From Euprymna scolopes (Eukaryota): 64,000 nt of DNA. The DNA lies in assembly GCA_053919585.1 (NCBI GenBank), contig CM132822.1, one strand, 5' to 3'. A model generated the notes under the pieces. It was not told the origin of the DNA. It did not search any database and saw nothing but the letters and a program-made list of their open reading frames with translations. The position numbers were made by a program, and so were the translations under genes. Of this stretch, positions 2,441 through 64,000 are shown piece after piece (position 1 is the stretch's first letter; each line of letters begins with the position of its first letter).

Positions 2441-3099
2441 AACAGAGAAAAAAGTTACTTTCATACATGTGGGAGAGAGAAATACAGACAGATAGATACA
2501 TAGCTCGTCCTGCAATACCTAGTTACATTATGAAACTCCCCCACCCTCATCATTAGGACAGCACATGGACATCTTTCCTGTTTGAACTCTCACTAGCTAA
2601 GAGATCGAATATCTTTGTCTGAAAGTCACATACTTTTGTCGACTTCCATCTGAGATAACCTCTGAATCTTAGGTGTCACTTGAACCTTTCCATTCAAACA
2701 TGTCCCTAGCTGTGTGACAGTATCACACAGAAACCCTGATTTGGGTTGGGTTACACATCATTTAAAAATTGCAGTCTTCATTGATGGTGTGTAACCTTAG
2801 TTATTTTTCAACCAACTCATACACATGACAGATGTGTTTAAGCTTATGTCATTGTTTAAAATGTTTCTTTATAGCAAGGATTTACTATACTTCACTGCAT
2901 TTGCTTTGAGATTAATTGCATCAGGCTGCCCAGAAAATACATGCTAATTTTTGTCATCAAGTTTTACTAAATGCTCACGAATGAGGCTCCAAAATGAAAA
3001 TATTTTTTAGCTTTCTTTCACAAGAGATAATTGGTGTGTTTTTTAATCAAAAAGTTTTCTATATTTGTCAATAATATTTTTTTTGTTGCATTTTCACCC

Positions 3100-3985
3100 T
3101 AAAAAAGGCACAGTGCCACTTTTATATAGGGAGTTACTATCAGGACATGAATTGCAGGGATACTATGTAGGGAAATGAGTAGCAAGATGTCTGTTTACAT
3201 TACACATAAACTTCTGCATGTCAGTACAGTTGGTGAAGCAGAACCCTGAAAGGAATTCCAAAGTTTAGCAATTCTGGGGAAGAAACTATTAGAATAGAAG
3301 GGTATCTGACATCCGGGGATCTCTACTATGTAGGGGTGGGATTTTTCTGCTTGTCAGGTTTGTCGGAGGTATTTATGCTGAAGGCTTGTAGTTCGTTGGG
3401 GCATCCACCATTAAAATACTAGTAAAACAGGTAGAGGCATGCGACATCTCGTTCATGGGACAAAGGTCGAAACCTAGCTGACAGTTCAGGACCTATTAGG
3501 TTGGCGACTCTTTTGAAGCCTATTCAGGAGTGAGAGCTGCACCAACCGAAATGTGACGACAATACTCCATACATGGGCGAATGGTGGCCTTGTAGAGGTA
3601 CAAGATACTTTCAGGCGTAACTAACTTTCTAGCACGGTAGAGAGAGCCCACCTTCCTCACAGCAGTCACAGCAATGCCTTCAATGTATCTGTTCCAACTT
3701 ATGTTCGCTGTGAAGCCAAGGAATTTGAACGAAGTACTTTCAGGTAATGTATCATTAGCCATAGCAATTGGTGGTTGAGAAGGTTTCTTGTAATTATTAA
3801 AGGAAAGGAGCTCAGTCTTGGCAGCATTGAATGTCACCATCCATTTTTGTTGCCATTCCATTACAGACTGGAGGTTTTCCTCTAAGGTTTCCGCCATTGC
3901 TTTGGATATGTGTTCATTCATCCCTCCCCTTCCCCGTGCCTTTTTTCAGGAATAATAAAGGTCCAAGGATCGATCCCTAGACTAC
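3100..3985 (-). mobile_element. 5'-truncated CR1/Zenon-like LINE (RT C-terminus and 3' UTR)
   Basis: ORF 3520-3921 (VTFNAAKT...RPCMEYCRHI) is closely similar to 1076-1621, in the opposite orientation. Confidence 0.88.
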
Positions 3986-6242
3986 ACTCTTATGTCTTAA
4001 TGTGTCGAATCATGAATTATTAAAAATCAATGCAAATTTTCCAGACAACTTAATGTATTTAAGATGCACAAGTAAATCTTCATTTTTTTTTACATCATTT
4101 AAAACGTTTTTTATTAAGTGTGAATGAGCGCCATGTATTAACTTGAAGTTTGAATATAAGAAAAGCAATTTAGCTTCTAATATGCATGGAAACTCTAAAT
4201 AAATAAGAGAAATTCTCGTTCGTAGACAAATGTATTATTTCACAAATAGTACCAGTGTATTTCCTAAATAAAATAATTATTGTGTTGCCCGAAAAATGCG
4301 AATTTAAACAAACAAACAAAAAAAAAATGACATTAAATATTTAATCAATCATGAATGATAGGTTTTGATACCTTAAGCATTTCTGCTAGTTCTCGTGTTG
4401 TGTAACGTGACTTATACTCAATATCTTGCTTTGCTTGTCACATGTAGAGGGTGGGATGCCTCAGCATTTTTCATCCTTACGATTAAAATCTCCAGTTCTA
4501 AATTATGTAAACCGCTTTTGTACAGTTCCGTCAGCTAAAACATCATCATCATCATCATCGTACACTGCACATATATTTTTGTTGTTGTCTGTGAAGTATT
4601 TTTGCCTTTATGGGAATAAAAACAAAGCATCAAGTGCCTAAAATAAGATTTACAATTTTCCACGCAAAATAATTTTTAACTTTCTTTCTCAATAAATGGC
4701 TTGAAGCAGGATCTAGCCGGAAATGTAAGTGCACAAAATCTGTAAATAATTTAACATGTTCTAACGTGTTGAAACGTGAAATACAAAAACTACAAATTTT
4801 TTGGACAACCTCATATTTTCATTTGACTGAAGAATTATATTATATAGATAAATTTGTTGAAGTGAAAGCCAATCAAAACCTTTGGCAAAGCAATGCAAAT
4901 TATTGAATTATTTAGCCCAGATAACCGGATTGAATTTCAAAATAGTCTACTCCACGTATCCCGATTGTAAACTCCTTGAAAGAACACATTTCGCTGGCAA
5001 ATACTTTTGTTTATAATTGTATTGTTTTACTACAAATAAAAGAAATCGTATTTTATAAGATGAATGAAAATTTGACCTTGCTTGGAATTGTACAATGAAA
5101 ACTGCTGTCATTTTTAACTCATTTCACAGCATTATATTACTTCCCCTACCACGTTTTACCTCCTAATCCAACTGGAAAAAAAACTGCTAAAATGTGTGAC
5201 ATGTAGTGTTAAAGTCTATACGAGAACAAGTGGAACGAAATGAGCTCAATATTGTCTCAGCATGTTTAAGGTTGTTCTTCTGAAAAAAATATGTTAAATA
5301 CAAAATATTTTCTTTGCACATAATCCATGAAAAACAAACAAATGATAAAAGAATCTACACAACGTTTTCTCCTCTTTAAAATGGCCACTTCTTACAATGT
5401 CTGTGATTAGTCAAAGAAACAACCAATCTTTGTCTGGTTAACGAATTCTGCCAGGATTACGTGCCTGTGAAATTTCGTGCTTTCTCCCTCTTTTGCCATG
5501 AAGTGAACACCTGCTATCCCCACCTTCAACACAGCAGGATGCGTGCAGAGGTTCGTATCAGCATTAACAGCATGCAAGATGAAGATCTCTATTTTTCATT
5601 TTTATTATGATTTTCAAATTGTTTGTGTCCCCTTTCTCGTTATCAGAATATACTTTATACCATATATCTAATTAGGAAAATCCCAATAATAGCTTTTAAT
5701 ATTTTTCTCTCAAGAGTGATTCTATAGTGGCATTTATTAGTACAGATAACAAACCGAAAAAGTGGTCTAGAAACAAAATATAATAACTAAATCTTACCGA
5801 ATGCAAGGTAAGTTACTCTTTTACCTACCTGGATAATTTTTTGTGATTTAACTTATTTTAAAGCATTTATTTACTTCAAAACACAAGTAGTGCCAGGTTC
5901 TTAAATTAGAACTACAACAAAATAGTGGACATGAGGTTGTCATTTGTAGTCTCGATAATCACTCGAAAATCAAAATAAAACAAAATAATGATAGAAACGC
6001 ACTCAATAAATGTCACTTTTGATGTAGTATAGAGATTACAATTGATAATTTATGCAAATGGATTTTTCACTTTTATGATCATCAGAGATTGTGCTTTTCC
6101 TTTTACAGATGTGGATGAAAAAATTGTGTTGCGTACTTAGCCTTGTGTCATACATGTAAAAACAAGTTGATGTAATCTGTTTGCTAGTCGTTTTGTGCAT
6201 GTAGCAAACCAGGAAAATGCTCAGCTCAAAGTCTGCAGCAAA

Positions 6243-6736: not shown

Positions 6737-7249
6737 GTCATAATCTTCAAACATCATCATAACCTTCAAACATCATTATACCATTCAAACATCATTATAC
6801 CTTCAAACATCATTATAACCTTCAAACATCATCATAACTTTCAAACATCATTATAACCTTCAAACATCATTATAACTTTCAAACATCATCATAATCTTCA
6901 AACATCATCATAACTTTCAAACATCATCATAACTTTCAAACATCATCATAACCTTCAAACATCATCATAACTTTCAAACATCATCATAACCTTCAAACAT
7001 CATCATAACTTTCAAAGATCATCATAACTTTCAAACATCATCATAACTTTCAAACATCATCATAACCTTCAAACATCATTATAACCTTCAAACATCATCA
7101 TAACTTTCAAACATCATCATAACTTTCAAACATCATCATAATCTTCAAACATCATCATAACTTTCAAACATCATCATAACTTTCAAACATCATCATAACC
7201 TTCAAACATCATCATAACCTTCAAACATCATCATAACTTTCAAACATAA
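6737..7249. repeat. 19-bp minisatellite (ATAAC(C/T)TTCAAACATCATC)n, about 27 copies
   Basis: Directly visible tandem array. Confidence 0.97.
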
Positions 7250-7602
7250 CTCCTTATACCCAATGCACAATGCTTTAAGCAAACGACAACATCCTTCGCA
7301 TATATGTGGCACAATGATAAGAACCCTTTTGTGGAAGATAGAGTTTCCCACAATTAGAGGGTCTTGTACTTGACTTTTATGATTCTTGTGGGAAGACACA
7401 TAGAATCGAAAAGGTGCCATTAAAACATGGTGAGGACAACTTGATGGCAAAAAATATGTCAATCAGATTTGATTCTGGCTGAGTTCGACAGATGTTTATA
7501 AAATCAACGATGGTAGGTGCATTGAATGAAACAAAGGTCAAATCAACTTGGGTGAGATCTGTAAATGTAATAATATTTCTCTGTTCTTTTTGGTCATATG
7601 GA

Positions 7603-7654
<52 letters not shown>

Positions 7655-8895
7655 AAAAATATGAAACTGTTGATAAATTGTAAATGATTACAATATCATT
7701 ACATCTTCGGTAGTATCACGGTAATTTTACATGAACCGAGTTACGTTCTAATTGCTGTACAACCAGTTTGTTGTAGCAAAGTGCGGTCATAGGTCAACTA
7801 CAACAATCTCTATGTGATATCGGAGGGGGGGGAGATTGGGAACGTAATTAAAGAATAAATGCTAATCATAAAATAAGAATTTATAATTAGACAAAACTAT
7901 TTCCCTGAGGTGTGTGACCATAAACGCTAGATTATTTAACTTACAGGAAGTCCAGCACCGAATCTTAAAAGATTATTACAGAACAAAAATATACCATTTA
8001 GATCCACACTTCAATATCCTTTCATGATCTTTCAAGATTTTTGTGTCATCAAAGTTTCAGTTATTTTTATTATTCATTTTTTATTTATTATTATCATTTT
8101 TTTTATATTTATCTTTTTTTATTTATTATTATTTATTTTCAATTATTTTTTTATTATTCATTTTTTATTTATTATTCTTGTCCATCCGCATAGTCCAGGA
8201 TTCAATAATGTCAGTTAAATGTAAAATAATAATAATGTGTGAGTCATGAACAACTGGAAATAGAATGCTCAAAATGTAAAAGAGATAACTATTTTTACCT
8301 TCAAACTTAAATGGGAGTTATCTCCCTTACATTTTCAGCTTTTTAGGTCATTAGTTAAAATTGTCTCCATTGTAATAATCTTCTCTGTCGGAATAATTAT
8401 TTTAGAAAAGAAACAGAAATAAATTACATATTTTACTATAAAAATATGCTGCAAAGATAAAAAAGTAAAAAATTGCTAATTAGAATCAAATATCGATTTG
8501 TCATATTTATTGCTATTTAGGTTTGGTTTGGTTTGGTTCGGTTGTTTCGTTTTATGCGATATCAACTCTTTTCAGGTTATTTGATGACAGATACGGTCAT
8601 TTTGGTAAAAGTTTTTATGCTTCAAATTCTTTATATCTTCAAATATTTATCAGAGTATTTAGTTTGGTTCTTTTATAGACGAAAATTGTTCTTTTTTGTT
8701 TTTGCAAAATATGATTGAGTTTTTCAAAGCAAAAGTAAAAAAAAAAAAAAAAGAAAACAGCAACATCAATGTTTGGTGCATTTTAAATTAGGAAGCCAGT
8801 ATCTTCAGACAGCCTTATCTGTTAGCACCAGGTTGCTATTGAAGTTCAATATAGAAAATTTGATGAGATAACTTTATATAATAGATTACTATATT

Positions 8896-23326: not shown

Positions 23327-23552
23327 CCATAGCCTTGAGCCCCTGTAGGAGCATAGGCTATCTACAACTTTGTAGATGCTTTTGTAACGAGGAGTTCTTT
23401 TTACAGGGTGAGGGTGCTGGCCCCACGCCTAACCTTCCCAGAAGGTACATACAGCGCCTAGCCTTCCCAAATGGTCACCCATCTGGCACTGGCCAGGCTC
23501 AATGTTACTTAACTTTGGTGATCTGGCGAGAACCGGTGTGTCAACATGATTG

Positions 23553-23558
<6 letters not shown>
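23327..23558 (-). mobile_element. 5S rRNA-derived SINE (SINE3-type) with RTE-like 3' tail
   Basis: Minus strand 23448-23556 aligns with animal 5S rRNA (caccggttctcg..gatcacc.aagttaag..ac...gatgggtgacc...tgggaa...gctgta). Tail gcctatgctcctacagggg. Flanked by (TA)n. Confidence 0.85.
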
Positions 23559-23642
<84 letters not shown>

Positions 23643-35969: not shown

Positions 35970-36250
35970 TTGGATGACTGCGTCCTTTGTCAAGACAAAG
36001 TAGGTCCATTCCACAGTCAGATTTTGCCACGGTTTGCTTGATCTGTGTTAGTTAATAGAATTTCTTGTGTGCAGGGTGTTTGCCCAGTTGGCTTAGTGCT
36101 TGCCTCGCATGCAAGAGACTCGAGTTTTGAATCCCGGGTTCGGATATGTCTAATTGATGAGTCCAAATGAGGGCGAAACTCAAGTCTTGGACATTCGGTT
36201 TGTTGGCTGTCATGGCTCTTGTGGGCTGTGACGTTGTTTAGCTGGGGAAA

Positions 36251-50632: not shown

Positions 50633-50790
50633 AGAAGAAGCATTAATGAAAACTGTAAGCAAACATTTACATGTAAAATTTATTTTTCGCCAGAATGCCT
50701 CAAAGATGATGAATAAATCCTTATTCTATGGAGTTTCAAAGAATGCAAAATTCTTCTCATCAGAGGAAATTTATACATATAGCAAAGCTA

Positions 50791-51338
50791 AAAATTTGCT
50801 GGTGTATGAAACGACATTATATGAAAAAAATATATCTGTAAATTGTTTATAAAAATGAATAAAAATGAAAAACAAAAATTTGCTGGTGTATGAAACGACA
50901 TTATATGAAAAAAATATATCTGTAAATTGTTTATAAAAATGAATAAAAATGAAAAACAAAAATTTGCTGGTGTATGAAACGACATTATATGAAACAAATA
51001 TATCTGTAAATTGTTTATAAAAATGAATAAAAATGAAAAACAAAAATTTGCTGGTGTATGAAACGACATTATATGAAAAAAATATATCTGTAAATTGTTT
51101 ATAAAAATGAATAAAAATGAAAAACAAAAATTTGCTGGTGTATGAAGCGACATTATATGAAAAAAATATATCTGTAAATTGTTTATAAAAATGAATAAAA
51201 ATGAAAAACAAAAATTTGCTGGTGTATGAAACAACATTATATGAAAAAAATATATCTGTAAATTGTTTATAAAAATGAATAAAAATGAAAAACAAAAATT
51301 TGCTGGTGTATGAAACGACATTATATGAAACGACATTA
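50791..51338. repeat. 84-bp tandem satellite, about 6.3 near-identical copies
   Basis: Period 84 (tttgctggtg at 50795, 50879...). Explains the 28-aa repeat ORFs. Confidence 0.96.
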
Positions 51339-51639
51339 AGGATCAAGTTTGGAAGTATTCCAATCCAATATGGGTAAGATGAATAATACGAAGTAGTTCA
51401 AATAAATTAGATCCATCGTTGAAAGGCCCTGAATAACATGGGATATCAGGTACGAGTCAAAAACAGGAAAAAGCCAGCCTTGATCCTTCCATGCTGCAAA
51501 ATAAGCTCTACTTCCTATTGTTGTTGTATTGAGTTTTTGGTTGGGATTAATATAAATATATTGAGGTTTACATTTGCTTTTGTCTAGTAAACTTTTCTTA
51601 TCTACTGCATGATTACTGTATATATATATATGGAAAGTT

Positions 51640-55727: not shown

Positions 55728-55775
<48 letters not shown>

Positions 55776-55779
<4 letters not shown>

Positions 55780-56021
55780 TATAATCACATTGACACACCG
55801 GTTCCCATCAGATCACCGAAGTTAAGCAACGTTGAGCCTGGTCATTACTAAAATGGGTGACCAATTTGGGAAGTCCAGGTGCTGTATGTAGGAGGACGTT
55901 GAACCCCTCTTTGCAAAAAGTTGCAAAAACCTAACGGGGATATACATGCAATTGGGGACCGCTTGTGAATTTCATACTCCATCGGAGGAAGCCGGTTAAA
56001 CCCTGAATAGGGTTGGTGCTG

Positions 56022-56175: not shown

Positions 56176-57570
56176 GAGAGTGATAATTGCTAATGGTCTG
56201 GAGATTCAAATCCAGCTAATAAACACCTTTAACTCCATTTTCTAGGATGTTACCTCTAGGCAACCATCAACTGCCACAAGAATTAAGGAAAATTAACAAC
56301 TATAAATGCCAAAAACAGGCACAGTGTTAAGGCATTCAATAGTGTTCAAATGATTGGAAATCATGAACTTGCCCAGAGCCAACCAATGACCATTGTCTGG
56401 GAAATAAAGGCGGTTGGTTGGCTTTGTACAAGTTCATGATGCCATTGTAAATTAGAGAAATTCAGCAGAAATTAGAATGGATTAGAAATCAAAATTAATT
56501 ATTTTATTTTGTTTAAAATAACACTGTTATCCTTTAAATATAATAATTTAAAGTCAGTATTAATATTTAAAATTTTTATGCGCATACATAATTATCTTTT
56601 TATTTTAAGTTTTATTTTATTTATTCTCTGAATTCTGGTTAATTATATAGTATAAGGGAGATAACTTTATCATACGAATCTATATATTAATACGATAGTG
56701 TGTGTGTTATTTTGTGTGTCATGCCCACAGCCTTAATAAACTGTGATTCTGCAACACTTAAAAAATTATAATCATCAATCCTACACTTTTGCTTTTAATA
56801 ATGACATCGAATTTCTTTATAGAAAGATCTGTTTCATTCTGTCTAGACAATTTCCGGTCACAGTAATACGAGCTTTCATGTCCGCCCTCCCCCGCTTAAA
56901 ATCACTTTTTCTTTTTAAGCCAAGGATGAAGGTTCTCATTTTGGATTTGTCTTTTCTTACTATTAGATCCCTTTTGATTAGGGACAGACTGTTATATATT
57001 CGTTATCATCGAGGTTATCCTTGAGGGGGACCAAATTGAGCTTTCGTTACATTTGAATATGTTATATAGAGTTCTTCATTTAGGGGCACTTTTTACGTTT
57101 GGGTGTATACACTATATAACATCAAAGATTCCGTGTGATTGTCTCTAATATAAATGGTTGTGTGTTTGATTATCATAAAGGGAATCGTGTGTGTGACATG
57201 TAATTTCTGAACCTACCTCTGCTTCTTCAAAACGAACAATCTGGAAATTTCTCATCCTGGAGGGAGACTTGATACCTGTTTGACGAAGATTTATCACTCC
57301 AAGACGATGAAATGGTTTTATAGTTTTTTATTTCACTTTCCCCAGAGGTTCTGCAGAAGTGGAAGTGAAATCGCTTGTGCGGGCTCTTCTTCACACACGT
57401 CAGCGTTAGTCTCCCCCCTCCCCAGTTAAGAGGGGGGAGACCACGGAAAAACGTCCGTCTTCTTCAAAGCTCAAATCAAATCTTTCAGATCTAGCCAACC
57501 ACGTCACACATACGTAATTTGGTCAGCTGACCTTTGGTTCTGGTAAACGTGTCTACCTCCACGTTTACTC

Positions 57571-57611
<41 letters not shown>

Positions 57612-57722
57612 CCTCTCTCTCTCCCTCTCTCCTTCTCCATTCTCTTATAGAGACACAGAGAGAGAAAATAGAAAGAGTAAGAAAGCCAGAGAGAGGGGGG
57701 GGGGGAGAGATGCTCGTTAACA

Positions 57723-57740
57723 TTCCTCCACCCCTTTTTT
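57723..57740 (-). promoter_or_regulatory. Polypurine tract
   Basis: Minus strand AAAAAAGGGGTGGAGGAA directly abuts the 3' LTR TG. Confidence 0.9.
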
Positions 57741-58138
57741 ATCAAAATGTATGGCAAGCCATACATTTTTAATAACTAACTAACTAAAAAAAATAATTAT
57801 GTCCGAAGTACATCTTTATTTTTTCACTTTCCGGACTCACCCCTTTTCCAAGAAAGATCAGGCACCAGTACTCTTCTACTACACTATCAACCCTTCTGCT
57901 GCTTCTCGAAAGTCTCTCCTCGACATTAACTTGCTTCCAAGTTAGACAAAGATACAACTTTGCAGATATACATCTTGTCTAGGTGGTCGCATTGTTGGAT
58001 ATTTTCCACTGACTCTGCTCTTTATTTGGACCACTTGGCCAAACAAATGGAGACTCCATTTTCGATCACTTTTTCGAAATGGGGCCAGCATATCGCAATT
58101 ACGACCAGAACGTCGGATGCTCCATGTTGGTGGTAGCT

Positions 58139-58211
58139 TTATCGCATGGGGACTCGAACCCCAGACCCTCAGATTAAAAGTCTGATGCTCTACCAACCCA
58201 ACCATCCCACT
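58139..58211 (-). tRNA. tRNA-Lys(TTT)-like sequence (pseudo-tRNA: intact anticodon arm and T-arm, broken acceptor stem)
   Basis: GGTAGAGCA-TCAGA-CTTTTAA-TCTGA-GGGTC-TGGGG-TTCGAGT-CCCCA. Confidence 0.85.
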
Positions 58212-60978
58212 CGCATTCTCGACTTTCAGCATAGGCCTAAGTCCCAGTTTTTTTTCCTTTACTGTAATGCCCTGACGTCTTTCTCTGAGTGGTCCTATTA
58301 CTGGAGCTTTGTTCTATTCTATCTACTACTTTGGGACTTCACAAAGCTCTTCTACTAACTCCCTTGGTTGGTCTAAGCCAAGATACGCCTTCACACTGAT
58401 TCACTCGGAGCCTGTTTGAGTTCCTGGAACCCGACAAGATACGGAATCTTCACTCCCTAACTAATGCGCCAAAGCTTACTTGCGCATCGATTTCTAACTA
58501 AGTAGCTTTCCCTTTGTGATTTTTCCGCATTCCCAGCAAGTCCCAAGATTCCAACCCAGATATCCCTCACACATTCCTCTAAAAAAAATAAAAAAATAAT
58601 AAGGCTCTATCTTGTCCCTTACGTAATCTGCATCTTTCCCTTTCTTCTATCTCCCCGTGATTAGGCTTGGTACCGACTGTCCAGTCGCTCCGTACCCTGA
58701 GGAATTATCGCGACCTCGCACGCCAGACTTTTGTTGGACAAGACTTATTGCCGTTGCTTGGGCCTACGTGGCATCTTCCAACTCACTGGAACCACTAGTA
58801 TTGTTTTAACAGGGTACTCATTACTCTAAAATAGTATTTCCCCTGCCAATTTTTCTAATTTGTGACAATACCGTGGCTTATAAAAAAAATAAAACAACAG
58901 AAAAAACTGCTTTCTACAGCCTAATCGCCTTGTAATTCTCATGAAAAAAATGCAACTACGCGCTAAACGTCCCTAAAATATAACTAAACCAACCAAATCT
59001 ATTCCAAAATAATTTAATTTAATAATACCAATTAAATTCACCCAACATGGTTTTTTTTTTTTTTTTTTTTTTTTACACTTTTGGTACCTTTAATTCACAA
59101 TAGGGTAACATTTTATTTTCCTAAGTACTTGCATACATATTTCATTCATCTTCTCTTGAGCGATTCGTAACATAATGGCCACGTCAGCCATTGCACCCCC
59201 TCTGCCCCTTACGCCATGTCAGAGGGCATTTCATTTGCTCTCTGAAGTTGATTACAACTAGATCCGCTCACGCTGGACAGAATACATTCCGTTTACTGCT
59301 ATGTCAGAAAAAACTTTATTTTTTTTTTCCAAAGTCGGTAAGCGCAACCTGCCTTGAAGACACATAGCTTCACGGAAAACATTGGATTTCCACACATGAA
59401 GTACTCAAACTTGCTCCATGTTGATTCTACTCGAAATCAACAGAAATCACGATAAAAAAAATAAAATTCGAATCATTTCCTGAGAATAATGAAATTAATA
59501 ACTACCCATGTAATTCAACACCTCTCCAAAATTCTAACATGCTTGCCACAGAAATTAAATTCCATTCACGCCCCACTTTTTTCTTTCATTTCTTCATATA
59601 GTTTATTTAACCCTATATTTATCTCTTTTTTTTTTCTTACTTATGTGGTCAAAACGTCACTCATGTCGAATAGAACATTTATTCTACTTTTCGAAAATTA
59701 AAATTAATACCGACTGAACCTTTTACTCTTCTGAAACTTTTTTTTTAAATCATTTATTACACTGTTTAAATCTTATTTCTTTCTCTTTTTTCCAATTTTA
59801 TTATTACTATAATGATTATTAATTAATTAATTAACAACACGTTCTTTCTTTTATTAATCATTCTTTCAATAGACCCCACAAGCAAAGATTTCACCTCCCC
59901 ATTCTGCGAAAAAAAAATACATGTCAAAGAACAAGAAAATTCTGCCAATACCGTTTGACAACACATCAATTACATAAAAATAATAAATTAAAAAATACAA
60001 AAATATCCTATAAGCAATCACAAAGTCCCATCTCACTAACAAAAATCCAAACAACAAAATTTTGTCCACGTCAGCAACTAGGTCGGCTGCATAGTGCATC
60101 ATCTTTTACCATTCCACAGTATTCAAAATTAAAGAAAAATCACAGTCGTTTACAAAAAAATACCTAGACATTTACAATTAAAATACAGTCGTTTCTAAAA
60201 TAAAATAAAACGACTCACTTATAAAGTCTCAGACAACTCGATGGAACTAAAATTGTCCATGTCAGAAAAAAAAATTCCTAAGAAATAAAATCGTACAATT
60301 AGTGAAAAAAAGGAAAAAAAATCACATTTCAGAACCTATCCATTGTTTTTCATCAAAAGTACATATTGTTTTTCCTTAAAAGTTACGCTTAGTTCACAGT
60401 TTAAAAATGACACAAAATATTCATAACAACATATTTGTGATTGACATGTTTATCTTTTTGGTAAAGGCTCGTTACAGTCATATGTTCTATTTCTTTTTTT
60501 TTCTTTTTGGTTTTCTCACTGGCTGTTGTTAAAAATTTACAAAATAAGGCCATTCTTTGTTTATCCCTTCTAATTTTGACATTAAGTGATATTTTTCTTC
60601 GTTCATAACGAGCTAATTCCCAATAGGATAAACATTTTTTTTTAACTATTTTCTATATATAAAGTTTTACATCTGTGTGTCTGTATGTCTTCCTTTTCTT
60701 TCTTCGTGAAAAGGTTGTATGTGTGTATTGCTTTTCTTTTTTTTTTCTTAATTATTTTTCTAATTCGCCTAGTGTTGTAATGGACCCTACGTTGTGTGTG
60801 TGTTGATTTGTATTTTTTTTACTGTTCTTTCTTTTTCTTTTTTTTTCCATGCATTTTATTGTTTTTCTTGTCCTTTTTTTTTTCTTTTTTTTAGTCTATT
60901 TCTTTTTTCTTGACACTAAATCTCCATGCTTCCACGTTGTATTTTCTTAAACACAGGTTCGATTATCGCATCGGTGAT

Positions 60979-60999
60979 GCGACTGGTCGACGAGCACCA
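60979..60999 (-). promoter_or_regulatory. Primer-binding-site region
   Basis: TGGTGCTCGTCGACCAGTCGC starts 9 nt after the 5' LTR end. Confidence 0.7.
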
Positions 61000-61590
61000 A
61001 ATTGAATATGTTATATATTCGTTATCATCGAGGTTATCCTTGAGGGGGACCAAATTGAGCTTTCGTTACATTTGAATATGTTATATAGAGTTCTTCATTT
61101 AGGGGCACTTTTTACGTTTGGGTGTATACACTATATAACATCAAAGATTCCGTGTGATTGTCTCTAATATAAATGGTTGTGTGTTTGATTATCATAAAGG
61201 GAATCGTGTGTGTGACATGTAATTTCTGAACCTACCTCTGCTTCTTCAAAACGAACAATCTGGAAATTTCTCATCCTGGAGGGAGACTTGATACCTGTTT
61301 GACGAAGATTTATCACTCCAAGACGATGAAATGGTTTTATAGTTTTTTATTTCACTTTCCCCAGAGGTTCTGCAGAAGTGGAAGTGAAATCGCTTGTGCG
61401 GGCTCTTCTTCACACACGTCAGCGTTAGTCTCCCCCCTCCCCAGTTAAGAGGGGGAGAGACCACGGAAAAACGTCCGTCTTCTTCAAAGCTCAAATCAAA
61501 TCTCTCAGATCTAGCCAACCACGTCACACATACGTAATTTGGTCAGCTGACCTTTGGTTCTGGTAAACGTGTCTACCTCCACGTTTACTC

Positions 61591-61631
<41 letters not shown>

Positions 61632-62106
61632 TCTCTCTCTCCCTCTCTCCTTCTCCATTCTCTTATAGAGACACAGAGAGAGAAAATAGAAAGAGTAAGA
61701 AAGCCAGAGAGAAGGGGGGGGGAGAGATGCTCGTTAACAAGACTTCTCTTTGGACTACTGCACTGCCTGGAAAAAAAACAATTTTCATTATTTCAGCTGT
61801 TTTGTAAACTTTCCAATCGAATTTTTGAAAACTTTCCAATTGGATTATATGCATCGTCACGCTGGATTTATCTTGGAATACATTCTATCTAAAGAACTAT
61901 TTTGCATTTTGGATAAACTCTAGAGGAGTTTCATTCAAGCTGAAATATTATGCGCGGTGTTTGTTTTTATATTAGTTTTTTACATATCCAACATTTTTTC
62001 ACTTTTTTATTGGGCAATTTATAACTACAATAAATTGCGGTTTCACTTAATACCTTAACTAGCAAATTCCAGCATTTCTACAAATATAATTTGCTGATTT
62101 CTTTAT

Positions 62107-62626: not shown

Positions 62627-63507
62627 TTCATCTTGAGTGTTATTCTCTAACCTTCTTCAATGATATCAAGTTGGTAATCTTTCTGTTGAACTTGGGAATC
62701 TGCACAGAATTTCAAATGGAATCTTTTATTTAATCCGCAGTGTTAGTATGTTCTTGTTCCGTCAGCCATGAACAGTTAGAATTCCAAATGATTCGGAATT
62801 GTATTCTCATTATTGCCCACACTGAGGATTGAACCTTCAACATTTAGGAGAGTGTCACTTACAACTGACTTTTCCCAAATACTGTATCCATTATGCCATG
62901 AGTCTACATGGTCCACTGGCGATACTAAGAATACAATTATGAATTACTTAAGGTTTCATGGCTGATGAAAAAAAGAGCAAGCTACCTTTATAGATTAAAT
63001 AAAAGGGTCTGTTCAAAATTCCATACAGATTCCCAAGTTTGATAGAAAGATCCATAAGTTTACAAGATGCACGTGAAGGAGGTTGGAAGTTAAAACATCA
63101 TGGGAATAATATGCAACATGAGACCAGTAGTCCGAATAGTCCAAATAATACAAATGATCAATCTTCATCTGAAAAGTTCAGAAACATAAGTTGTTTGATA
63201 TTATAATTGGAATGAAGAATTGTGCTTATTACATATGCATCATTATAATTGTAGTTTAAATCATAGATATGTGACCACATTTGGTTATAGTCAGCTAACG
63301 TCTTCCCTAATTTTCTGCGGAGTATTACCAGAAGGCAAATCAGTTCCTTTGCTTGTTTTGTTATTCAGCATTTGTATTTTGAAGCAATTTAAATAAAATA
63401 CATGAAAAGAGCATTATTGAAAAATGTACAACAAAAATTAACAAAATGATAAAAAGATAAAAATAACACAATTAGTCTTTATTTGTACTTTTAGTAACAA
63501 AATTTTG

Positions 63508-64000
63508 AAAATGAAAGTTTTTATTTTATTTGAAATTTTATAAGAAATATGTTTATGAAGTTATAAAAATGAAAGTTTTTCTTTTATTTGAAATTTTATA
63601 AGAAATATGTTTATGAAGTTATAAAAATAAAAGTTTTTCTTTTATTTGAAATTTTATAAGAAATATGTTTATGAAGTTATAAAAATGAAAGTTTTTCTTT
63701 TATTTGAAATTTTATAAGAAATATGTTTATGAAGTTATAAAAATAAAAGTTTTTCTTTTATTTGAAATTTTATAAGAAATATGTTTATGAAGTTATAAAA
63801 ATGAAAGTTTTTATTTTATTTGAAATTTTATAAGAAATATGTTTATGAAGTTATAAAAATAAAAGTTTTTCTTTTATTTGAAATTTTATAAGAAATATGT
63901 TTATGAAGTTATAAAAATGAAAGTTTTTATTTTATTTGAAATTTTATAAGAAATATGTTTATGAAGTTATAAAAATAAAAGTTTTTCTTTTATTTGAAAT
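63508..64000. repeat. 58-bp AT-rich satellite running off the window end
   Basis: Period 58 (63513, 63571, 63629...). Confidence 0.96.

What the first reader, a model, noticed from the sequence alone, without database searches (positions are those of the whole stretch)
57786..58211. Candidate Pol III ncRNA unit (tRNA-Lys head, ~350 nt structured body, T8 terminator) carried inside a young non-coding LTR retrotransposon
Seen: in the element's sense (minus) strand there is a tRNA-Lys(UUU)-like head with a perfect anticodon arm and a perfect B-box (GGTTCGAGTCC). Its T-stem is TGGGG/CCCCA instead of the usual animal CAGGG/CCCTG, so both strands changed and pairing is kept, while the acceptor stem is destroyed. 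Downstream there is no T4 run for ~350 nt, although the opposite strand has several. Then a T8 (57786-57793) sits just before a perfect 12-bp hairpin (57744-57769) and the PPT. The body has many hairpins (aaatggag-a-ctccattt, taacttg..caagtta, tagacaa..ttgtcta). There is no SINE-type tail or TSD. Known: plant Cassandra elements carry Pol III-transcribed 5S domains in their LTRs. Inference: an analogous animal element using a captured tRNA as an internal promoter for a ~420-nt RNA (packaging signal, decoy or primer competitor).
Basis: partly seen in the sequence, partly recalled or inferred. Interest (0 to 1): 0.75.

Follow-up and report, generated by a model that had tools for sequence, protein, structure and literature searches.

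The report
tRNA-Lys relic inside LTR retrotransposon
A piece of a lysine tRNA, still carrying an intact RNA polymerase III promoter box, is built into a 1.4-kb non-coding cassette that about 640 young, gene-less LTR retrotransposons of this large mollusc genome carry; whether it makes an RNA of its own could not be tested.

Summary
On the minus strand at 58146-58205 lies a tRNA-Lys(UUU)-like segment (Rfam tRNA 38 bits). Its anticodon and T arms are intact, its B-box is perfect, and it has no acceptor stem. About 350 nt further on come a T8 run, an 11-bp hairpin, the polypurine tract and the 3' LTR of a 4.75-kb non-coding LTR element. The LTRs are 99% identical and the target-site duplication is GTCT.

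The segment is not a free SINE. Four probes (head, its upstream flank, the head-body junction, and a site 500 nt upstream) each give 630-645 genome hits. The head belongs to a 1.4-kb cassette shared at 98.5-99.5% identity by three LTR families whose LTRs are otherwise barely alignable. That points to recent exchange by recombination.

The supporting arguments for a Pol III gene are weak:
- The T4-free stretch is not unusual (38% of shuffles also lack T4).
- The copies are too alike to show covariation.
- The excess folding is equal on both strands.
- The predicted RNA lacks R, PBS and PPT, so this is not a Cassandra/Helenus-type design.
- The PBS is not Lys-type.

No expression data could be obtained. 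Most likely this is a captured tRNA-derived sequence travelling as a passenger. Pol III activity remains plausible but untested.

The parts
61740..61743 (-). target-site duplication GTCT, 5' side
   Evidence: read directly; same four bases at 56986-56989
61009..61739 (-). 5' LTR (TG...CA, 731 nt, with a (GA)n microsatellite)
   Evidence: direct repeats D4, D6, D7; 99.0% identical to the 3' LTR
60945..60999 (-). primer-binding region: TGGTGCTCGTCGACCAG, then a hairpin, then an antisense B-box-like TCGAACC; not Lys-type
   Evidence: the homologous site in family C (L038:4146-4190) looks like a tRNA-His-type 3' end (recalled from memory)
59124..60944 (-). AT-rich 5' internal region specific to family A, non-coding
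   Evidence: 77-90% identical to family C and unrelated to family B
59050..59123 (-). 5' edge of the shared 1.4-kb cassette: ATTAAA signal-like motif plus an A-run; indel hot spot
58212..59049 (-). upstream part of the shared cassette (about 840 nt, non-coding)
   Evidence: 630 genome hits for a 35-mer at 58666-58700; no Pfam match
58146..58205 (-). tRNA-Lys(UUU)-derived head (tRNA positions 7-64); A-box-like stretch at 58194-58204, perfect B-box at 58150-58160
   Evidence: Rfam RF00005 38.2 bits; same position in 20 of 20 other loci; 631 genome hits
57794..58145 (-). 352-nt body with several short hairpins and no TTTT
   Evidence: head-body junction gives 645 genome hits
57786..57793 (-). T8 run, a possible Pol III terminator; pairs with an upstream A-rich run in the predicted fold
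57744..57769 (-). 11-bp hairpin just upstream of the PPT
   Evidence: z -3.1; together with the PPT it occurs 794 times in the genome
57724..57740 (-). polypurine tract AAAAAAGGGGTGGAGGA
56990..57722 (-). 3' LTR
56986..56989 (-). target-site duplication GTCT, 3' side

Best explanation
The head is a relic of a tRNA-Lys(UUU)-derived Pol III-type sequence (a SINE-like head or a tRNA-derived transcript). It was captured once, in sense orientation, into the 3' internal region of a gene-less LTR retrotransposon. Capture was either by nested insertion or by template switching of reverse transcriptase onto a co-packaged small RNA (inferred).

It is now a fixed part of a 1.4-kb non-coding cassette. The cassette runs from an A-run, through about 840 nt, the tRNA head, the 352-nt body and T8, to the hairpin and PPT.

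The cassette multiplies only as a passenger of the ordinary LTR cycle:
- a Pol II genomic RNA runs from LTR to LTR;
- reverse transcription is primed at a non-Lys PBS;
- plus-strand synthesis starts from the PPT;
- integration makes a 4-bp duplication;
- the proteins come in trans from an autonomous element that was not found (inferred).

The cassette has recently been passed between at least three LTR families by recombination. All of these families burst to about 640 copies in total.

The intact promoter boxes reflect the youth of the burst, not demonstrated selection. Pol III may still fire from the head and stop at T8, giving an RNA of about 430 nt. Such an RNA could not itself be retrotransposed by the LTR route, and no role for it is shown.
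For: - The head is a real tRNA derivative (Rfam 38 bits) but not a tRNA gene.
- It sits at the same place in 20 of 20 further loci. In the 30 loci it lies in the same context.
- Genome counts are equal: head 631, the 35-mer just upstream 631, the head-body junction 645, and a 35-mer 500 nt upstream 630. There are no free copies and no cassette copies without the head.
- The cassette in family B differs from the majority base of the family-A-context copies at 6 of about 1330 positions, and the one family C copy at about 20. The LTRs of the three families align only over their first 120-210 nt, at 81-89%. Their 5' internal regions are unrelated or 77-90% alike.
- The host element has LTRs, a PBS, a PPT and a 4-bp duplication, and no coding capacity.
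- The T4-free stretch is within chance.
Against: - No empty-site version of the cassette and no donor SINE was found, so the capture itself is inferred.
- The unit is the most structured window of the element (z -2.9 to -3.45, against about 0 elsewhere on the sense strand).
- The B-box is perfect and T8 lies at the edge of the homology with family B's extra hairpin-PPT copy. This would fit a discrete Pol III unit.
- Every successful young family carries the cassette, which could mean it helps.
- No RNA data were available.
Confidence: 0.55

Rival explanations
1. The head is a working internal Pol III promoter. Each copy makes a structured RNA of about 430 nt, ending at T8, which serves the element, for example as a packaging partner or decoy.
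For: - The B-box is perfect and an A-box-like stretch lies at the canonical 44-nt spacing.
- The first strong T run downstream is T8, kept in nearly all of the 30 aligned copies.
- The fold z-score is -3.45, with 0 of 100 shuffles as good.
- The unit is present in every cassette copy of three LTR families.
Against: - No expression evidence could be had.
- The T-free stretch is not significant.
- The structure signal is equal on the antisense strand.
- The local stem around the head is not robust in the majority variant (z -1.0).
- There is no covariation.
- Conserved A-box positions C11 and A14 are changed.
- The RNA would lack R, PBS and PPT.
- The PBS is not Lys-type, which argues against a primer competitor.
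Confidence: 0.2
2. The head works in cis without making its own RNA. It could act as a TFIIIC-bound B-box that shields the element from silencing, as tRNA-gene barriers do. Or it could act as a tRNA-like fold in the genomic RNA that helps packaging or export. That advantage would explain why the cassette spread to several LTR families.
For: - The cassette is nearly identical in families with very different LTRs, and all of these families burst recently.
- The B-box, anticodon arm and T arm are intact while the rest of the tRNA is not.
Against: - Near-identity across families is equally explained by recent recombination without any benefit.
- There is no acceptor stem, so the segment is a poor tRNA mimic for tRNA-binding enzymes.
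- Nothing here tests chromatin or packaging.
Confidence: 0.12
3. The head and body are a leftover of minus-strand strong-stop DNA still joined to its tRNA-Lys primer. This is the model of Ohshima et al. 1993 for tRNA-Lys SINEs, recalled from memory.
For: The head is Lys-derived, in sense orientation, and lies inside a retroelement of a cephalopod-like genome. That is the group in which a tRNA-Lys SINE was first linked to retroviruses (reference listed in PMC9223172).
Against: - The body has no similarity to the LTRs of families A, B or C on either strand.
- The tRNA 3' end, which would be the junction, is missing.
- The PBS of these elements is not Lys-type.
Confidence: 0.03

Closest known systems
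Helenus / TRIMp3 (Kojima 2024, PMC10886601): non-autonomous LTR retrotransposons with a tRNA-derived sequence
   Same: Both are gene-less LTR elements of animals, molluscs included. Both have a PBS, a PPT and 4-bp duplications, and a tRNA-like piece that keeps its B-box but is not a functional tRNA. A SINE insertion into an older element is the likely origin.
   Different: In Helenus the tRNA piece lies in the LTR, where Pol III could transcribe the whole 0.3-1.3-kb element. Here it lies in the internal region, 420 nt before the PPT, of a 4.75-kb element with 731-nt LTRs. A Pol III RNA from it could not be a retrotransposition template.
Cassandra (plants) and Ajax (nemerteans): TRIMs with a 5S rRNA-derived Pol III promoter in the LTR
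   Same: A small-RNA-gene promoter carried by an LTR element.
   Different: The promoter is 5S-derived rather than tRNA-derived, it sits in the LTR, and the elements are short. The LTRs of this element give no small-RNA hit.
tRNA-derived SINEs (SINE2), including the tRNA-Lys SINEs of squid and salmonids
   Same: A tRNA-Lys-like head with A and B boxes, followed by a tRNA-unrelated body of a few hundred nt.
   Different: There are no independent copies, no LINE-type tail and no duplications of its own. The one Ceph-domain motif printed in PMC5786205 is absent. Published cephalopod SINE sequences were not at hand for comparison.
LARD-type large non-autonomous LTR retrotransposons with captured or mosaic internal sequence
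   Same: Several kb long, non-coding, mobilised in trans, with an internal region made of exchanged blocks.
   Different: The exchanged block here carries a tRNA-derived promoter-like unit and is shared almost unchanged by three LTR families.

Membership tests
Non-autonomous LTR retrotransposon (LARD-like) | Two LTRs with TG...CA ends, flanked by a target-site duplication | tested here: met
   LTRs 61009-61739 and 56990-57722, 99% identical; GTCT on both sides
Non-autonomous LTR retrotransposon (LARD-like) | PBS after the 5' LTR and PPT before the 3' LTR | tested here: met
   TGGTGCTCG... 9 nt after the LTR; AAAAAAGGGGTGGAGGA one base before the LTR
Non-autonomous LTR retrotransposon (LARD-like) | No gag/pol coding capacity | tested here: met
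   Longest ORFs are 60-112 aa. No Pfam hit for 8 stop-free sense-strand pieces of the cassette. The 96-aa ORF has no relatives.
Helenus / TRIMp3 | tRNA-derived sequence lies inside the LTRs | tested here: not met
   The only tRNA hit is internal, at 58146-58205; the LTRs have none
Helenus / TRIMp3 | TRIM size (311-1263 bp, short LTRs), compatible with Pol III transcription of the whole element | tested here: not met
   The element is 4750 bp with 731-bp LTRs, and its internal sense strand has many T runs
SINE (SINEBase definition, PMC3531059) | Internal Pol III promoter (A and B boxes) | tested here: inconclusive
   The B-box is perfect. The A-box region is TGGTTGGGT(C/T)GG against TRGCNNAGTGG. 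Transcription was not testable.
SINE (SINEBase definition, PMC3531059) | Short independent copies mobilised by a LINE, with their own tail and duplications | tested here: not met
   The head, both junction/flank probes and the distant cassette probe give 630-645 hits each. No A-tail or duplication bounds the unit.
tRNA gene | Cloverleaf with acceptor stem | tested here: not met
   ARAGORN finds none in the window or in 32 loci. The Rfam match covers only positions 7-64.

The most novel reading that the evidence does not exclude
The 1.4-kb cassette is a portable 'fitness module' for gene-less LTR retrotransposons. Its tRNA-derived unit recruits TFIIIC or Pol III, either as a chromatin barrier or as the source of a 430-nt helper RNA. 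This would be why every LTR family that acquired the cassette by recombination burst recently. It would be a use of a Pol III unit by LTR elements different from the LTR-borne promoters of Cassandra and Helenus.
Probability: 0.12. Interest if true: 0.7.

Novelty: new variant of a known kind. Interest (0 to 1): 0.35.

Why it matters
tRNA- and 5S-derived promoters inside LTR elements have so far been described in the LTRs of very short elements (Cassandra, Helenus, Ajax). There Pol III can plausibly make the transposition template.

Here a tRNA-derived promoter-like unit sits in the internal region of large elements. It belongs to a cassette that moves between LTR families. That makes about 640 near-identical potential Pol III or TFIIIC sites in a genome group said to have almost no SINEs (PMC13218726).

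If the sites are active, this would be a new way for LTR elements to use Pol III signals, and a sizeable source of tRNA-like loci to account for in annotation. If they are inactive, it is an ordinary captured relic. It would still be a clean example of block exchange among non-autonomous LTR families.

Tried and rejected
- **More genomic context.** Module-less relatives and further copies could not be fetched.
- **Autonomous partner.** 30 loci around the best integrase (PF00665) matches share nothing with families A, B or C. This was a long shot among 35,600 candidates.
- **Relatives elsewhere.**
  - The 96-aa ORF over the head has no relatives in the protein collection.
  - The head-body junction has no exact match in metagenome contigs.
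  - A sequence look-up in earlier findings was blank.
- **Decayed integrase.** No Pfam hit.
- **Strong-stop origin.** The body has no similarity to the LTRs.
- **Ceph-SINE.** The one 23-nt Ceph motif printed in PMC5786205 is absent from the window.
- **The genome's own tRNA-Lys(UUU) gene.** It was not found with four patterns. The hits were CUU-derived array members or copies of this element.
- **tRNA-His 3' end typed from memory.** No match, so the His assignment of the PBS rests on resemblance only.
- **Integration next to Pol III genes.** There are no tRNA genes in the flanks of 29 copies. One 5S-like hit in a flank is at background frequency.
- **Ohshima et al. 1993.** The paper is not held.
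- **Sequences built.** Only per-column counts were made.

Full report
**What is there**

On the minus strand the window holds a complete LTR element.
- The 5' LTR is at 61009-61739 and the 3' LTR at 56990-57722. Both have TG...CA ends, are 99.0% identical, and are flanked by GTCT on both sides.
- After the 5' LTR comes a primer-binding region starting TGGTGCTCG.
- Before the 3' LTR lie an 11-bp hairpin (57744-57769) and a polypurine tract (57724-57740).
- The 3.3-kb interior has no ORF above 112 aa. Eight stop-free sense-strand pieces of its 3' part give no Pfam hit.

It is therefore a young, gene-less (LARD-like) LTR retrotransposon.

**The tRNA-like head**

Rfam's tRNA model matches 58146-58205 (minus strand) at 38.2 bits, above the gathering score of 29, over model positions 7-64.
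- The anticodon arm (anticodon UUU) and the T arm are perfect.
- The B-box GGTTCGAGTCC is perfect and unique in the window.
- The A-box region is degenerate. It reads TGGTTGGGTTGG here, and 27 of 30 copies have C at 58195.
- There is no acceptor stem. ARAGORN calls nothing in the window or in 32 loci with copies.

However, this genome's tRNA-Lys(CUU) genes also have a G-rich T stem and a TTCGAG loop. The stem may therefore simply be native. I could not find the genome's tRNA-Lys(UUU) gene to settle this.

**Downstream of the head**

The 352-nt body has no TTTT, but 38% of dinucleotide shuffles lack it too. The whole stretch from about 58580 downward is poor in T runs.

The T8 at 57786-57793 reads T7, T8 or T9 in all but one of the 30 aligned copies.

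The 426-nt unit folds better than shuffles (z -3.45; -2.9 in my rerun). It is the most structured window of the element on the sense strand. The antisense strand scores the same (-3.1). The signal therefore comes from DNA-level palindromes and does not point to an RNA of one strand. The long stem that replaces the acceptor stem in the window copy is not robust in the majority variant (z -1.0).

**Family context**

The genome is 5.9 Gb. It is probably a decapodiform cephalopod, judged from its size and from hits on contigs numbered up to C46; this is an inference. It holds many copies:
- The top 40 hits to 57723-58260 are all 99% identical.
- In 30 loci the unit lies in the same context.
- Rfam finds the head at the same position in 20 of 20 loci.

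Whole-genome pattern counts:

| Probe | Mismatches allowed | Genome hits |
|---|---|---|
| Head, 35-mer | up to 2 | 631 |
| 35-mer just upstream of the head | up to 2 | 631 |
| Head-body junction, 26-mer | up to 3 | 645 |
| 35-mer 500 nt upstream of the head | up to 2 | 630 |

So the head never occurs without its flanks, and the surrounding sequence never occurs without the head, within roughly 6-12% divergence. No free SINE is visible.

**A shared cassette**

Three LTR families carry the same 1.4-kb block (window 59123-57724).
- Family A is the window copy.
- Family B is L037. Its LTRs are 3060-3768 and 7351-8059, and its 5' interior is unrelated to family A.
- Family C is L038. Its LTRs are 3532-4136 and 7133-7744, and its 5' interior is 77-90% identical to family A.

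Their LTRs align only over the first 120-210 nt, at 81-89%. Yet the block in B differs from the majority base of the family-A-context copies at 6 of about 1330 positions. The single C copy differs at about 20.

Such near-identity, no greater than the variation within a family, means recent exchange by recombination. It is not long-term purifying selection.

In B the block follows an extra copy of the hairpin and PPT. The hairpin-PPT motif occurs 794 times, and 11 pairs spaced about 1.39 kb apart are seen among the first 100 rows. The block starts with an ATTAAA-plus-A-run that looks like the end of a polyadenylated RNA.

**How it most likely works**

*Shown:*
- The head is tRNA-derived.
- It is an integral part of a cassette inside LTR elements.
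- Those elements have all the cis parts of the LTR cycle and no genes.

*Inferred:*
- The head entered once, by nested SINE or tRNA-retrocopy insertion or by template switching onto a co-packaged Pol III transcript.
- It is now copied as a passenger of the Pol II genomic RNA, with proteins supplied in trans.
- The boxes are intact because the burst is recent.

Pol III transcription from the head to T8 is plausible from the sequence; I put it at roughly 40%. Such an RNA would lack R, U5, PBS and PPT. It therefore cannot be the transposition template, unlike in Cassandra or Helenus, where the promoter is in the LTR (PMC10886601).

A primer-competitor role is unlikely. The PBS does not match a tRNA-Lys 3' end, and in family C it resembles a tRNA-His-type end (recalled from memory, my pattern test failed).

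**Other origins tested**
- The body is not related to any of the LTRs on either strand. The strong-stop model for tRNA-Lys SINEs therefore finds no support.
- The one Ceph-domain motif available in print is absent.
- There is no integrase remnant.

**Limits**
- No expression data were available.
- No further genome fetches were possible.
- No relatives outside this genome were found.
- The autonomous partner was not found.
- The copies are too similar for covariation. The few shared variants in the body keep or break predicted pairs without compensation.

**Verdict**

The Pol III-gene reading is neither refuted nor positively supported. The best reading is a captured tRNA-Lys-derived unit inside a recombining non-coding cassette of LARD-like LTR retrotransposons.

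It is not a member of Helenus/TRIMp3, of SINEs or of tRNA genes. It is a new variant within the known theme of small-RNA-derived sequences in LTR elements.

Another first-stage note on this genome (s1-247409) records the same kind of tRNA-Lys mimic in a non-coding LTR element on another piece. That fits the roughly 640 copies counted here.

Noticed in passing
window 55772-55890 (+), 23446-23562 (-); L015:2816-2932 (-): 5S rRNA-like sequences (78, 66 and 66 bits against Rfam RF00001) lie outside the LTR element. In the window they are flanked by microsatellites. They may be a dispersed 5S-derived repeat.
   Followed up: no
window 36148-36192 (+): Type I hammerhead ribozyme hit (39.5 bits, gathering score 34). 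It lies inside the stretch another first-stage note (s1-268992) calls a tRNA-headed hammerhead retroelement.
   Followed up: no
window 60945-60999 (-); L038:4146-4190: The primer-binding region reads like an extended antisense copy of a tRNA 3' part: TGG..., then a hairpin, then an antisense B-box TCGAACC. In family C the first 17 nt resemble a tRNA-His-type end. My remembered tRNA-His pattern found no gene.
   Followed up: partly
L037:5894-5960 and 7285-7350; genome-wide: Family B elements carry a second hairpin+PPT copy about 1.39 kb upstream of the terminal one. The motif gives 794 genome hits against about 640 cassettes, with 11 such pairs among the first 100 rows. This internal PPT might act like a central PPT.
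   Followed up: partly
window 59050-59123 (-): An ATTAAA signal-like motif plus a 25-nt A-run marks the 5' edge of the shared cassette and is an indel hot spot among copies. It looks like the captured 3' end of a polyadenylated RNA.
   Followed up: partly
L034 and L035 (G000:C18:104238399-104260867): A dense tandem array alternates tRNA-Gly(UCC) and tRNA-Lys(CUU) genes, 11 tRNA genes per 3 kb. Single members are mutated to the anticodons UUU or UAC.
   Followed up: no
window 57942-58232 (-): A 96-aa ATG ORF runs across the tRNA-like head and is kept in family B. It has no Pfam match and no relatives, so it is most likely spurious.
   Followed up: yes
window 50706-51461 and 63384-63963: Tandem arrays with periods of 84 nt and 58 nt, many of whose overlapping windows are 97-99% identical to the reference copy.
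   Followed up: no
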